DNA of 47,681 nt from Ministeria vibrans ATCC 50519 (lineage: Eukaryota; Protista; Filasterea). Below the pieces are notes generated by a model that worked only from the letters and a program-made list of their open reading frames with translations, searched no databases and was not told the DNA's origin. How positions within the stretch are numbered: the first letter of the stretch is position 1; each line of letters begins with the position of its first letter. This document shows, piece after piece, positions 13,355 to 16,903 of this stretch. The stretch lies in assembly GCA_943704425.1 (NCBI GenBank), contig CALSCP010002221.1, forward strand, positions 1 through 47,681, read 5' to 3'. The translations under genes and the position numbers were made by a program.

Positions 13355-13564
13355 TTCTGTTTCATTGTCATTCGGAAGATGTCTTTTTTTTTTTTTTTTT
13401 TTTTNNNNNNNNNNGGGGGGGGGGTTTGGAACGAAATATTGTTGCTTAAAAGCGAGCAAATGCGCCGGAACTGTTCTTTCCAGATCTGCGAGAGGACTCT
13501 TCGCCAACCGCCTAAACATCCAAAGTGATGATGATGAGAAAAGACAGCACGAAAAATATGGAAC

Positions 13565-15693
13565 TCATACGAAAGTGGTGGATGATTTTCCAGTGTGGAC
13601 TGTTGTTGTTGTGGTGGTCTTGACAGCACCGCCGCCACTGCTGCCACCACCACTGCTGCTATGCATTGACATGCCGTTGGTTGCACCGCCGCCACTGGTA
13701 GAGTACGTGACTGTCCTCTTGACGGTGCTGTTGCTGCTGCCGCCCTTGCCGCCAACAATGGGTGGAAGAGACCCACCGCCACTCACAGTCACACTCGAAC
13801 TGCTCATACCACCACCACCACCACCACCACCACCGCCGCCGCTGCCGCTGCCGCCACCGCCGCCACCACCACGGCCTCCACCGCCACCACCGCCCAATCC
13901 AGCAAAGACATCGCCACTGAACACTGCCGATGACTTATGCTTGGCCAACACCTGATCGGCCTCAATCAGACTCGCTCCAAATCCACCGCCGCCTCCAAAC
14001 GAAATTCCCAGACGCGACTCCTCCGCCATCAAAAGCTGCGAGTACTTTTCAATCTCAGCCTTGAGCATTCCAATGACCTAATGACAGATCGAATTGAGAG
14101 GGGGTGAGGGAGGAGAAGTAGCGGGGTAAATTCGCACCATGACAAGCTCTTGGTAGAAGGACGCTTGCACGTTGAGCTGCGAGTGGATCTCGGTGATGCG
14201 CGACTCGTACATGCTCGACTGTGATGAAATTTGTCCTCGTGCCTCACTCAGGAGACCCTCCAGCTCGATAATGCTACAAGAAAAATAAAAATAAATCACT
14301 GCTCTTTTGGAACGTTCTGTGCGCTTACCGTCGCTCGAGTTTGTGGATCGTGTCGTTGCTCGCATTGAGGTCAATGCGGTAGCGACTGAGCTCATCCTGA
14401 AGTGCCTTAATCTCAAGCGAGAGGGAGCGTGCCTGTTCAATGGCTGCCTGACACTCAAGACGAATGGTCTGGATCTCCGATTCGTACTTGGCGCGCATTT
14501 CCAACGACGCGCGGTTTGCGTCCTCAATCGCCTGCTGACGCACCCCATCCACCGCAATTCGCACTCGCTCTTCAAGTGTACGCGCAAATCCGGCTTCAGC
14601 ATCGCGAAGCTTTGCCTATACGTGAGAAAAAAATAGGAAAAAAGAAACACCAAACCAATCAGCGCCACTTTTTTTTTTTCTTTTTTAAAAAACGAATCGA
14701 AATACCTCGAGATCATTGATGATGCATTGGAGGCGCTGAACCTCTTCGGCATGGACCTTTTTAAGGAAAGCCAGTTCGTCACGGACGCCCTGAAACTCGG
14801 TGACTTGACGGACGGTGACTTCATAGTCGTGACGGATTTTGTCGAGGTCACGGCGAGCGTCGTCGAGGTCGCGACTGAGACGACCACAGTCGTTCTTGAG
14901 GGAACGGTTCTCCTCGGTAATGGTGGTGATGGTTGTCTCGTAGCTGTGGCGATCGTTGCCGAGCGAGCGCATTTCAGCGCTGAGCTGATCACGTTCGCGT
15001 GTGACACCATCGAGCGACCCGCGCAAGTCGCGAATCTGAATAAGAAGCGCATCGCGTTCGCGCGCCAGCTGGTCTGCGTTGCCTTGACGGCCCTCGAGCG
15101 CGCGGTACTGCGACAGCAGCTCCTCGTACATGCTCTTGAGACGCGCCGCCTCCGCACCGCCACCTCGCAAGTTGTCAATCTCCATGCGCAACTGTGCAAT
15201 GAGCTGCTCACCCTCGCCGTGACGACGACGCAGATCGTCAATGGTGGCCGATTGCTGCGAAATGGTCGACTGGCACGAAGACACTTCGTTGCGACTGTTG
15301 GACAGGTCGCAGCGCAGCTGGTCAATCTCCTGCTGAAACGTCATCGACATTTTCTGCATCTCTTCCAGATGAAAACGCTTGAAAGCCTCCAACTCTGCCT
15401 CGAGCGACATGTTCTTCTCTTGAATCTGACGGCGGCGAGAAATGTACCTGAAAAATTATTATTATTATTAATATTATTATTATTAATATTATTATTATTA
15501 TTATTATGATTGTTATAATAACTATTAATTTGGTATATTGGGCGTACGTTTCAAGACGGCTGTTGAGGTGTGACAGCGATGATTCTTGCATGGCAAGTGA
15601 CTTGACACCTTCCGAAGCTTGCGTCACCGTGACCGAATAGGAACCGCTCGCCTGTTACCAATGTGCATAATAATAAACAAACAACACGTTATT

Positions 15694-15733
<40 letters not shown>

Positions 15734-16081
15734 GCTCCGCCGTTGTACATACTTCCTCCACCACCACCTCCGCTGAGGTTGGAAGAAGTGCGCACTGTAC
15801 GAGTGGTTGTGGACGAGACACCGCCGCCACCACCACCACCACCACCGCCACCGCCACCGCTGCTGCTGCTCATGTGCATGCTGCTGTTACCATAGCCACC
15901 CGAGCCACCCATCACCTGAGAGAGGGAGGGNNNNNNNNNNGGGGGGGGGAGGGGGGGAAGAAGAAAAGGTCAGAGGGAGGGAGTTGCAAGGAGAGTGGCT
16001 TCGTACTCGACTGCTGCTGGAACTCTGATGGCCACCGCTGCGGCTGCCACCGCCGCTTTGGTACGAATATGTCGTTGTCGT
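13565..16081 (-). CDS. Intermediate-filament protein with Gly/Ser-rich head and tail (exons ~16081-16007, 15917-15733, 15651-15548, 15447-14706, 14615-14329, 14273-14138, 14077-13565; start codon unresolved, possibly 16198)
   Basis: Splicing produces the helix-initiation motif LNSRLETYI, the coil-1B end motif DELAFLKKVHAEE and the helix-termination motif EIEKYSQLLMAEESRL, with heptad coiled coil between them. The head and tail carry poly-Gly/Ser loops. Confidence 0.85.
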
Positions 16082-16903
16082 CTGTGTGCAAAAACAGAAG
16101 AATTGTTATTATTATTATCAGAAGGAAGATATAGACGCAAGCCGAGGCAGCACAAATGCGATCAAAGAAAACAAAGTGAACCCATGTGCTTGCGACATTG
16201 GTTTAAAGAAAGCGCTGCATTGCGCATGGCGCGCAGTTTGATGCTTTTTTTTCCTGAAAATGTTCTCTCCATAGCAACCAGTGGAAAAAGCCGCTGAGAC
16301 TCAAGCTGATTGTGCAAGATGTGCAGAAAAAAGTGATGTAGGAGACCAACTGAATGTGTTGGAACGGAGATCAAGCGGAATAGAGGAAGTGCAAAAGCGC
16401 TTTGTGAGTGAAGGGGGTTTTTACTTGGTTGCCATGGAGAAAAGTGAGAAAAAAAAACGTGCAGGAGAACTCTTAGCAGACAAACAAGAGCGAGTAGTGC
16501 AATGTGCATTGAGGGATGTCTATTGAATGGTGGAGGGGCCCTTGATTTTGAGGGATTGGAGAGTGGACGAGGAAGGTGAAAGGAAGGTGTAAAAATGCCC
16601 ATGTTCATATTTAGCCGGGATGGGTGTGATGCTATACCTTCTTGGATGACATGCCTTTTTGTGTGTATCGATGAGGTTGAGACAACAAGCAATAAGACTG
16701 GTCGGTTGAAATTTTTTTACTGATAATTGGGAACTTAATTAAAAGAGTTTGATAAGAAAAAAAAACCCACTTCCGTCTTCAGCATTGCGACTTGGGTCCT
16801 GGAGGCTGGAAGACAAAACCAACCTTTGTGTGATCGTTCTATATTGCTGACTTTGCAGTCGATCAATCTCTTTTCACAGTTGAGATAAATAATTCGCGTT
16901 GCT

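What the first reader, a model, noticed from the sequence alone, without database searches (positions are those of the whole stretch)
13565..16198. Keratin/desmin-like intermediate-filament protein lacking all lamin features, in an apparently non-animal eukaryote
Seen after splicing: all three IF hallmarks. These are LNSRLETYI (consensus LNDRLAxYI), DELAFLKKVHAEEVQRLQ (very close to type III/keratin EEIAFLKKxHEEE) and EIEKYSQLLMAEESRL (consensus EIATYRKLLEGEESR). The head and tail are Gly/Ser loops with aromatic anchors (SGGYGNSS, SFGGGGGFG, TVKRTVTYSTSGGG, ending TTTTTTVHTGKSSTTFV), like epidermal keratins. There is no lamin Ig-fold tail, no obvious basic NLS and no CaaX. The introns share the AAT/poly-T style of neighbouring genes, so this is unlikely to be contamination. 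Known: cytoplasmic IFs are considered animal derivatives of lamin, and recognised protist IF homologues such as Dictyostelium NE81 are lamin-like. Inference: an independently evolved or pre-metazoan cytoplasmic IF cytoskeleton with convergent glycine-loop end domains. This is the best candidate for an undescribed system in the window.
Basis: partly seen in the sequence, partly recalled or inferred. Interest (0 to 1): 0.88.

Follow-up and report, generated by a model that had tools for sequence, protein, structure and literature searches.

The report
Lamin-less intermediate-filament protein in a protist
A small, flagellated, non-animal relative of animals carries, besides a normal nuclear lamin, a second, transcribed intermediate-filament gene with glycine/serine-rich ends and none of the lamin's nuclear features, so it is a candidate for a cytoplasmic intermediate filament outside animals.

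Summary
A nine-exon gene on the minus strand (13446-16081, start codon unresolved) encodes at least 699 aa. It has a Gly/Ser/Thr/Tyr-rich head, a rod of about 425 aa carrying the three intermediate-filament (IF) landmarks, and a Gly/Ser tail.

- **Family:** Pfam Filament passes its cut-off on the largest exon alone (54.8 bits against 40) and on the coil-2 ORF of a metagenomic orthologue (43.7 bits).
- **Expression:** spliced contigs from three public runs confirm five introns. The orthologue ends ...GLGRF*.
- **Lamin features:** there is no NLS, S/T-P site, lamin tail domain or CaaX. The same genome has a canonical lamin on another contig.
- **Organism:** the genome (29.7 Mb) has integrin beta and tektin, but no Wnt, TGF-beta or nuclear-receptor hit, and only 9 homeodomain hits. 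It is a flagellated unicellular opisthokont, probably filasterean-like, and not Capsaspora.
- **Rod geometry:** the coil-2 half matches the lamin (189 against 190 aa). The coil-1 half is about 65 aa longer.
- **Dimer:** a parallel in-register dimer is predicted (0.48; best control 0.00).

Cytoplasmic location and filament assembly are inferred, not shown. The N gap lies in a presumed intron and no read spans it. It is not a keratin or desmin orthologue. I rate it a new variant of a known kind.

The parts
16154..16198 (-). Candidate first coding exon (ATG at 16198). This is the only phase-0 option near exon 2 and its donor (GTGCTG) is weak. It is doubtful.
Evidence: enumerated ATG-to-GT phase-0 options. 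The spliced runs have no depth at 16108-16211.
16007..16081 (-). Exon 2: 25 aa of Ser/Thr/Gly/Tyr-rich head (TTTTYSYQSGGGS...). It has no ATG and an in-frame stop lies upstream of its acceptor.
   Evidence: It resembles the orthologue's head (..TTSYTTTSKSSS..). It has no RNA support because the region was skipped as repeat.
15916..16006 (-). Presumed intron 2 (GTACGA...CTCTCAG), containing the assembly gap at 15931-15940 in a poly-C tract. Its length is only estimated.
   Evidence: Sequence reading. No read spans it and no other copy exists in the genome.
15733..15915 (-). Exon 3: 61 aa of Gly-rich head (43% Gly). It contains an alternative start, ATG at 15912.
   Evidence: Loose ends of the spliced contigs at 15652 run on into 15734 and beyond.
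15548..15651 (-). Exon 4: the end of the head (SGSYSVTVTQASEGV) and the start of the rod (..LSHLNSRLE-T).
   Evidence: The contig piece 15544-15652 joins 15443 in run X9.
14706..15447 (-). Exon 5: 247 aa covering the rest of coil 1A, an extended coil 1 and the AFLKKVHAEE motif.
   Evidence: Pfam Filament 54.8 bits against a cut-off of 40 and 59.6 bits. The AF2 model has helices at 2-95, 97-119 and 124-246. A parallel in-register dimer is predicted.
14329..14615 (-). Exon 6: 95 aa of coil 2.
   Evidence: Filament profile positions 170-244 at 16 bits. Spliced on both sides. Colinear with the orthologue.
14138..14273 (-). Exon 7: 45 aa of coil 2 (..FYQELVM).
   Evidence: Joints 14273/14329 and 14075/14136. 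47% identity to the orthologue.
13571..14077 (-). Exon 8: the rod end (EIEKYSQLLMAEESRLGIS) followed by 146 aa of Gly/Ser tail with conserved islands.
   Evidence: No Pfam family matches it.
13512..13570 (-).
   Evidence: A joint at 13510/13570 is seen in runs X9, X13 and X11, while the DNA run X4 is unspliced.
13446..13511 (-). Exon 9: the last 21 aa (AVGEESSRRSGKNSSGAFARF) and the TAA stop at 13448-13446.
   Evidence: The C-terminus resembles the orthologue's ..NGGLGRF*. The contigs reach only 13457, so the stop codon itself is not covered by RNA.

Best explanation
This is an expressed, single-copy, divergent member of the intermediate-filament/lamin superfamily in a flagellated unicellular opisthokont that is not an animal and is probably filasterean-like.

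It has the tripartite IF plan:
- a low-complexity Gly/Ser/Thr/Tyr head of at least 103 aa;
- an alpha-helical rod of about 425 aa with the IF consensus motifs at both ends;
- a Gly/Ser tail of about 167 aa.

It lacks everything that makes a lamin nuclear: CDK1 sites, NLS, the Ig-fold lamin tail domain and CaaX. The same genome keeps a canonical lamin.

**Shown:** family membership, gene structure, transcription and splicing, absence of lamin features, presence of orthologues, and the non-animal gene content of the genome.

**Inferred:** the rod forms parallel in-register coiled-coil dimers that assemble into filaments. Without an NLS these would lie in the cytoplasm or cortex. The glycine-rich ends would mediate lateral or network contacts as in keratins. 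The gene would have arisen from a lamin-like ancestor outside the animal lineage.
For: **Family membership**
- Pfam Filament exceeds its gathering score on exon 5 alone (54.8 bits; 59.6 bits) and on the orthologue's coil-2 ORF (43.7 bits, profile 91-312).
- Together the pieces cover profile positions 3-313 in order.
- Three landmarks are colinear with the organism's own lamin.
- From the DxLxFxKK motif to EExRL there are 189 aa, against 190 in that lamin.

**Transcription**
- GT..AG joints or spliced pieces appear in runs X9, X13 and X11 from three studies. DNA run X4 is unspliced.

**Absence of lamin features**
- No NLS-like, S/T-P or CaaX motif in any exon, whereas the lamin has SP x2 in its head, RKRRR and the start of an LTD.
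- LTD hits in the genome: only a weak match (20.7 bits, below the cut-off) inside a 1718-aa open frame on contig C1670. The lamin's own partial LTD, cut by an assembly gap, scores 17.6 bits on its ORF.

**Conservation**
- L008 (a metagenome contig, 68% GC) encodes the same head-rod-tail plan with conserved tail islands and the same kind of C-terminus.
- L009 is a closer relative, about 54% identical.
- The gene is single copy.

**Dimer**
- ipSAE 0.48 against a best control of 0.00.
- The runs agree in at least 82% of contacts and partner pLDDT is at least 72.
- The mark was reached by 21 of 30 proteins solved as pairs of one chain and 0 of 23 solved as single chains (microbes).
- On eukaryotes it was reached by 17 of 29, but by only 1 of the 7 with no older solved relative.
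- Contacts are residue i to residue i, with 3-4 spacing along all 247 residues.

**Organism**
- for gene content.
- ATP synthase beta is 85-87% identical to animals and Syssomonas.
Against: - No localisation or assembly data exist.
- The 5' end and start codon are unresolved, so an N-terminal signal cannot be fully excluded in this copy. The orthologue's head, read from its ATG, also has none.
- Pairwise similarity to solved IF rods is marginal. The ESM Atlas returns only generic coiled coils.
- The coil-1 half is about 65 aa longer than in the lamin, and the AF2 model breaks it at positions that do not match canonical L1/L12. Canonical IF assembly geometry is therefore not guaranteed.
- A dimer pass for a coiled coil may partly reflect model memory of solved IF or coiled-coil dimers.
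- The species is hidden, so I could not check whether the gene is already annotated or described under its name.
Confidence: 0.6

Rival explanations
1. It is a nucleoskeletal protein after all: a second, atypical lamina component that enters the nucleus without a classical NLS, for example by co-assembling or piggy-backing with the canonical lamin, or during an open or semi-open mitosis.
For: It shares LNSRLExYI and EExRLGIS with the organism's own lamin, and its coil-2 half has almost the same length (189 against 190 aa). Heterotypic rod pairing is therefore conceivable. Koreny and Field (PMC5630835) show that lamin homologues vary widely in their motifs.
Against: Neither this copy nor the orthologue has any basic cluster, CDK1 site flanking the rod, or membrane anchor. 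Only two SPTK sites occur, in the orthologue's tail. The coil-1 half is 65 aa longer than the lamin's, which argues against in-register heterodimers.
Confidence: 0.2
2. It is a generic long coiled-coil protein whose IF-like motifs are convergent, so it is not a true IF homologue.
For: Exon 5 also gives sub-threshold matches to many coiled-coil families. phmmer against 1.84 billion representatives finds no named IF at E<=1e-3. The Atlas neighbours are generic coiled coils.
Against: Filament is the only family above its curated cut-off, by seven orders of magnitude in E-value, and independently so in the orthologue. The three landmarks are in the right order and, for coil 2, at the right spacing. 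The best PDB matches after one generic protein are vimentin coil 1B and keratin 10 coil 1B, aligned on the AFLKKxHEEE motif.
Confidence: 0.08
3. The gene or the genome is metazoan (contamination or a reduced animal), which would make this an ordinary invertebrate cytoplasmic IF.
For: ATP synthase beta on the same contig is 85-87% identical to animal proteins. An adhesion GPCR, an LRR_8 protein and an ECT2-like GEF are neighbours.
Against: There is no Wnt, TGF-beta or nuclear-receptor hit and only 9 homeodomain hits in 29.7 Mb, while integrin beta and tektin are found by the same method. No animal IF is a significant relative. The lamin resembles the Capsaspora lamin printed in PMC5630835 (Table S1) more than the other lamins visible there (comparison by eye).
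Confidence: 0.04

Closest known systems
Nuclear lamins of unicellular holozoans (for example Capsaspora XP_004365259; Kollmar 2015, PMC4448529; Koreny and Field 2016, PMC5630835) and this genome's own lamin on contig C409
   Same: An IF rod with the LNS(R/K)LExYI start and the LLExEE(K/S)RLG end, a long coil 1B, and the same length for the coil-2 half (189 against 190 aa).
   Different: No S/T-P sites, NLS, Ig-fold tail or CaaX. The head and tail are Gly/Ser low-complexity sequence. The coil-1 half is about 65 aa longer. Intron positions are not shared with the lamin gene.
[quoted passage not shown]
   Same: A non-metazoan duplicate of a lamin-type gene that has lost nuclear signals, already suggested to work outside the nucleus.
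   Different: Those were found through lamin or tail-domain homology. The Creolimax sequence visible shows no glycine-rich ends. The present gene has no LTD at all and belongs to a different lineage. Orthology between the two was not tested.
LTD-less lamin derivatives in animals: vertebrate type I-IV IFs, the Amphimedon and Adineta lamins that lack the IG domain and CaaX, and the tail-less copepod lamins (Lepeophtheirus, Eurytemora) (Kollmar 2015)
   Same: Loss of NLS, LTD and CaaX from a lamin-like ancestor. The Gly/Ser-rich ends with scattered aromatic residues recall epidermal keratins.
   Different: Vertebrate cytoplasmic IFs have a coil 1B shortened by 42 aa, whereas here it is lengthened. 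There is no sign of type I/II pairing and only one gene. Sequence similarity is only at profile level. The organism is not an animal.
Cilin and nematocilin (preprint 10.1101/2025.08.21.671432)
   Same: Proposed ancient lamin-derived cytoplasmic IFs. That preprint states that cytoplasmic IFs are metazoan-specific.
   Different: Nematocilins keep the IG (lamin tail) domain plus a conserved C-terminal region (Kollmar 2015), and cilins form a clade with them. The present protein has neither.

Membership tests
Intermediate filament protein family (Pfam PF00038 Filament) | A match to the Filament profile at or above the curated gathering score | tested here: met
   Exon 5 alone scores 54.8 bits against 40, and 59.6 bits with its neighbours in frame. 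The orthologue's coil-2 ORF scores 43.7 bits.
Intermediate filament protein family (Pfam PF00038 Filament) | Conserved helix-initiation motif (LNDR[LF]AxYIxKVR) and helix-termination motif (EIATYRKLLEGEExR) at the two rod ends | tested here: met
   LNSRLETYISRRRQ spans the confirmed E4/E5 splice, and EIEKYSQLLMAEESRL is in E8. Both are conserved in L008.
Intermediate filament protein family (Pfam PF00038 Filament) | Canonical rod length and subdomain spacing (about 310 aa, or about 352 aa with the 42-aa coil 1B insert) | tested here: not met
   The rod is about 425 aa. The coil-1 half has 221 aa between landmarks, against 156 in the organism's own lamin. The coil-2 half is canonical (189 against 190). 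Helix breaks fall at 96 and 120-123 of exon 5.
Intermediate filament protein family (Pfam PF00038 Filament) | A parallel in-register coiled-coil dimer as the building block | tested here: inconclusive
   This is a prediction only: ipSAE 0.48 against a best control of 0.00, at least 82% contact agreement and pLDDT at least 72. The mark was reached by 21 of 30 solved homodimers and 0 of 23 single chains. It may reflect model memory.
Intermediate filament protein family (Pfam PF00038 Filament) | Self-assembly into filaments of about 10 nm | not testable with these tools
   This needs recombinant protein and electron microscopy.
Nuclear lamins | A classical NLS after the rod | tested here: not met
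   No K[KR]x[KR] motif or basic run in any exon or in the orthologue. The organism's own lamin has RKRRR.
Nuclear lamins | Ig-fold lamin tail domain (PF00932) | tested here: not met
   No Pfam hit in the tail. The genome-wide LTD search finds nothing on this contig.
Nuclear lamins | A C-terminal CaaX box | tested here: not met
   The RNA-supported C-terminus is ..GAFARF* with no Cys. The orthologue ends ..GLGRF*.
Nuclear lamins | CDK1 (S/T-P) sites flanking the rod | tested here: not met
   No S/T-P in any exon.
Keratins / type III (desmin, vimentin) IFs | A short coil 1B (without the 42-aa lamin insert) and clear sequence orthology | tested here: not met
   Coil 1 is longer than in lamins. 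phmmer against PDB gives vimentin 1B at E 0.014 and keratin 10 at E 0.042 only. No named IF appears at E<=1e-3 among 1.84 billion representatives.

The most novel reading that the evidence does not exclude
A lineage of unicellular relatives of animals evolved, or inherited from a pre-animal ancestor, a true cytoplasmic intermediate-filament system. A lamin-type rod lost its NLS, Ig tail and CaaX and gained keratin-like glycine-rich end domains. If so, cytoplasmic IFs are not an animal-only invention, and the glycine-loop design arose at least twice.
Probability: 0.4. Interest if true: 0.85.

Novelty: new variant of a known kind. Interest (0 to 1): 0.62.

Why it matters
Current literature treats cytoplasmic intermediate filaments as an animal innovation derived from lamins (the PMC9145010 introduction; the 2025 Cilin preprint, which found no orthologues of ctenophore cytoplasmic IFs in choanoflagellates). 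The only earlier hint outside animals is a lamin duplicate in ichthyosporeans.

This locus gives a concrete, transcribed gene with at least two orthologues in a non-animal genome, next to an intact lamin. That is a natural pair for testing three things: whether loss of NLS, LTD and CaaX is enough to make a cytoplasmic filament; whether glycine-rich ends are a convergent solution; and what such a filament does in a single flagellated cell.

If the protein proves to be nuclear or non-filamentous, it is still an unusual lamin paralogue with a rod extended by about nine heptads.

Tried and rejected
- All searches were run exon by exon, by reference.
Whole-protein HMM scores, full-length homologue searches and a full-length fold were therefore left out.

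**Searches that found little or nothing**
- phmmer of exon 5 against 1.84 billion representatives gave 16 hits. Only P0002 and P0003 are real relatives and P0001 is the gene's own ORF.
- The search for homologous proteins with the orthologue's coil 2 found nothing.
- A metagenome-contig scan with alignment A1 matched 600 patterns, but none was confirmed.
- The ESM Atlas returned only generic coiled coils.
- PDB phmmer with the orthologue's whole ORF hit only Gly-Ser linkers. Its coil 2 alone gave nothing significant.

**Naming the organism**
- Run and organism names are coded.
- ATP synthase beta gives only 'animals plus Syssomonas' at 85-87%.
- The TauD-HD neighbour has a patchy distribution, with best hits in Tetraparma and an oomycete.
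- Accession and sample codes were found in no paper.
- Motifs of this genome's lamin are absent from the lamin tables of PMC5630835 and PMC4448529.
- Capsaspora was considered and rejected, because its lamin sequence differs and tektin is present here.

**Other**
- A third IF gene was rejected. L004 and L005 are generic or repeat coiled coils.
- Synteny with L008 could not be judged because the neighbours have no Pfam families.
- Closing the N gap failed: reads were skipped there as repeat and there is no second copy.
- A phylogeny with reference lamins and cytoplasmic IFs was not possible.
Full report
**What is there**

The finding lies on the minus strand. Reading the sequence and laying public contigs on it gives this gene model in window coordinates:

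| Exon | Coordinates |
|---|---|
| E2 | 16081-16007 |
| E3 | 15915-15733 |
| E4 | 15651-15548 |
| E5 | 15447-14706 |
| E6 | 14615-14329 |
| E7 | 14273-14138 |
| E8 | 14077-13571 |
| E9 | 13511-13449, stop TAA at 13448-13446 |

That is 2097 coding bases, or 699 codons, counted from E2. Each exon was translated and searched on its own, by reference.

**RNA evidence**

Run X4 carries the locus unspliced, so it is DNA. Runs X9, X13 and X11 come from three different studies and carry it spliced.
- GT..AG joints are reported at 14075/14136 and 14273/14329.
- Contig pieces join 14614 to 14705 and 15443 to 15544. The second has a four-base GTAC ambiguity, which is compatible with the canonical intron 15448-15547.
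- Loose ends at 15652 continue with the sequence at 15734 and beyond.
- All three spliced runs also show a joint at 13510/13570. The real C-terminus is therefore ...SSTTF|AVGEESSRRSGKNSSGAFARF*.
- The contigs reach only 13457, so the TAA itself is not covered. However, the metagenomic orthologue ends in a contiguous ORF with ...NGGLGRF*, which supports this end.

**The assembly gap and the 5' end**

The gap at 15931-15940 lies in a poly-C tract, 15 nt upstream of the CTCTCAG acceptor of E3 and downstream of a GTACGA donor after E2. In the model it is intronic.
- No contig spans it, because the whole stretch 15692-16107 was skipped as repeat for all four runs.
- The genome holds no second copy.
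- Continuity across the gap is therefore not shown.
- E2 has no ATG and an in-frame stop lies just upstream of its acceptor.
- The only nearby phase-0 option is 16198-16154, with a weak GTGCTG donor. Otherwise translation could start at the ATG at 15912 in E3.
- The orthologue has ATG|GTATGT and then a head that begins ..AHASATQTSRK..TTSYTTTS... An E2-like segment is thus coding there. The start in this copy stays open.
- Both gaps in this stretch (this one and 13406-13415) adjoin homopolymer runs. A homopolymer error in CATGGGTTC is therefore possible, but I did not test it.

**Is it an intermediate-filament protein?**

Yes, at family level.
- On E5 alone, Pfam Filament scores 54.8 bits (E 1.5e-14), above its cut-off of 40. 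The next family (ATG16) has E 3.5e-7 and is below its cut-off.
- The six-frame genome search gives 59.6 bits for the two E5 stretches.
- E6 matches profile positions 170-244 weakly (16 bits).
- The orthologue's coil-2 ORF independently passes (43.7 bits, profile 91-312). Its head-plus-coil-1 ORF matches profile 3-114.
- Pairwise similarity to solved IFs is marginal: vimentin 1B (3UF1) E 0.014 and keratin 10 1B E 0.042, both aligned on the AFLKKxHEEE motif.
- No named IF is found at E<=1e-3 among 1.84 billion representatives.
- It is therefore a divergent member, recognisable by profile and architecture. It is not a keratin or desmin orthologue.

**Rod geometry**

- From D of DELAFLKK to L of EESRL there are 189 residues, against 190 for the same landmarks in the organism's lamin.
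- Between Y of the xYI motif and that D there are 221 residues, against 156 in the lamin. The difference is +65, about nine heptads.
- Pfam matches E5 twice over profile region 33-109.
- A second copy of the F-x-K-x-H-x-EE motif (AFKRFHLEE) lies 20 residues after the xYI motif and is invariant in the relatives.
- An AF2 model of E5 (pLDDT 88.5) is helical over 2-95, 97-119 and 124-246. The breaks fall at a GGG and at GRQGN.
- A two-copy prediction passes the tool's mark. ipSAE is 0.48 and the best of three controls is 0.00. The runs agree in at least 82% of contacts and partner pLDDT is at least 72.
- That mark was reached by 21 of 30 proteins solved as pairs of one chain and by 0 of 23 solved as single chains. 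On eukaryotes it was reached by 17 of 29, but by only 1 of the 7 without an older solved relative.
- The contacts are residue i with residue i, at 3-4 spacing along the whole exon. This is a parallel in-register coiled coil.
- It is a model, may reflect memory of solved coiled coils, and does not show binding.

**End domains and missing lamin features**

- The head (E2, E3 and the first 17 residues of E4; 103 aa) is 32% Gly, 25% Ser, 11% Thr and 5% Tyr.
- The tail (167 aa) is 33.5% Gly, 19% Ser, 9% Thr and 4% Phe.
- The tail is not only low complexity. Islands such as G-x-SL..AD...HKS, [RK]TVT..TS.G, a TTTTT run and the terminal G..[AG]RF are shared with the orthologue.
- No exon contains K[KR]x[KR], a basic run of four or more, an S/T-P site or a C-terminal Cys. 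Pfam finds nothing in the tail.
- The orthologue, read from its ATG, also lacks an NLS-like motif.

**The organism has a normal lamin too**

Contig C409 (L007) carries a seven-exon gene.
- Its head has two SP sites.
- It has LNSRLENYI, DSLVFAKKEH, ..KTYQKLLELEEKRLGIS, an RKRRR NLS and the start of an Ig-type tail. Filament scores 38.1 bits on the last rod exon and LTD scores 17.6 bits.
- A gap of about 1.4 kb then cuts the tail, so its CaaX cannot be seen.
- These are the only two IF-family genes detected. The two other weak Filament hits are generic coiled coils, and the gene itself is single copy.
- The two genes share no intron positions.

**What organism?**

Names are coded or withheld, but several lines of evidence bear on it.
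- The assembly is 29.7 Mb in 2860 pieces.
- The same exon-wise search that finds three integrin-beta genes (224, 190 and 183 bits) and a tektin (168 bits) finds no Wnt, TGF-beta or nuclear-receptor zinc finger. It finds only nine homeodomain matches. The tool warns that an empty result is not proof of absence.
- Window neighbours include an EGF-GPS-7tm_2 adhesion GPCR, an LRR_8 protein and an ECT2-like GEF.
- ATP synthase beta is 85-87% identical to animal proteins and to Syssomonas.
- It is not Capsaspora. That species' lamin, printed in Table S1 of PMC5630835, differs. I take Capsaspora to be aflagellate from my own knowledge, and here tektin is present.
- By eye, the lamin is closer to the Capsaspora lamin (MSSP...EKE.L.[WF]LNS[RK]LE.YI; LLE[LV]EEKRLG) than to the Creolimax or Salpingoeca sequences visible in the same passage.
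- My reading is a flagellated unicellular opisthokont, probably filasterean-like. This is an inference, not a placement.

**Relatives**

Only three lineages are known to me.
- This genome. A metagenome contig (L010) is 99.2% identical to it over 900 bp, introns included.
- L009, an 801-bp contig of assembly GCA_025491055.1, about 54% identical in coil 1A and 58% in the head-rod junction.
- L008, a 4-kb JGI metagenome contig at 66-69% GC, 34-47% identical along the rod, with the same head-rod-tail plan and differently placed introns.

Conservation across such different base composition argues for a real gene under selection.

**Comparison with what is known**

- Kollmar 2015 (PMC4448529) and Koreny and Field 2016 (PMC5630835) found single classical lamins in Capsaspora and Monosiga.
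- Reviews and the 2025 Cilin preprint still treat cytoplasmic IFs as metazoan-specific.
- I found no paper describing an LTD-less IF protein with glycine-rich ends in a unicellular relative of animals. The library is open-access only, and the species name is hidden from me.

**Verdict**

The gene is a genuine IF-family protein without lamin features, beside a true lamin, in a non-animal genome.
- Cytoplasmic filaments and an independent or pre-metazoan origin remain inferences.
- I rate it a new variant of a known kind, with moderately high interest.

Noticed in passing
L007:3933-5996 (G000:C409): A canonical lamin gene of seven exons, with SP sites in the head, an RKRRR NLS and the start of an Ig-type tail. 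An assembly gap of about 1.4 kb cuts the tail domain, so the CaaX end cannot be read.
   Followed up: partly
window:25448-27148 (+): A single 566-aa ORF fuses a TauD/TfdA dioxygenase to an HD domain (phosphonate-breakdown type). Its best named relatives are a bolidophyte alga (Tetraparma, 50%) and an oomycete, followed by bacteria. This is a patchy distribution for a holozoan-type genome.
   Followed up: partly
window:14706-15446 (-), residues 21-29 and 225-234 of exon 5: The F-x-K-x-H-x-EE motif occurs twice in the rod (AFKRFHLEE and AFLKKVHAEE). Pfam matches profile region 33-109 twice. This suggests that the extra ~65 residues of coil 1 arose by partial internal duplication. BLAST of the exon against itself shows no residual repeat.
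   Followed up: partly
window:13406-13415 and 15931-15940: Both 10-N gaps in this stretch adjoin homopolymer runs (T/G at the first, C at the second). The assembly seems to break at homopolymers, so homopolymer-length errors elsewhere, for example in CATGGGTTC near 16183, are possible.
   Followed up: no
L010 (ENA metagenome contig, 900 bp): A metagenome assembly holds a contig 99.2% identical to window 14602-15501, including intron sequence. Coded runs labelled as several other organisms and as 'algae metagenome' also hold the locus. The organism therefore turns up in samples not labelled as it.
   Followed up: partly
window:3001-6729 (+): A 1242-aa open frame encodes an adhesion-type GPCR (EGF, GPS and 7tm_2 domains) in a genome without Wnt, TGF-beta or nuclear-receptor hits.
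   Followed up: no
G000:C1670:93375-93692 (L006): The only LTD hit from the genome-wide search is a weak one (20.7 bits) inside a 1718-aa open frame, probably a large surface protein rather than a lamin. The lamin's own partial LTD, cut by an assembly gap, was not returned by that search.
   Followed up: no
L008:133-170: In the metagenomic orthologue the start codon appears to be an exon of its own: ATG followed at once by GTATGT and an intron of about 31 nt.
   Followed up: no
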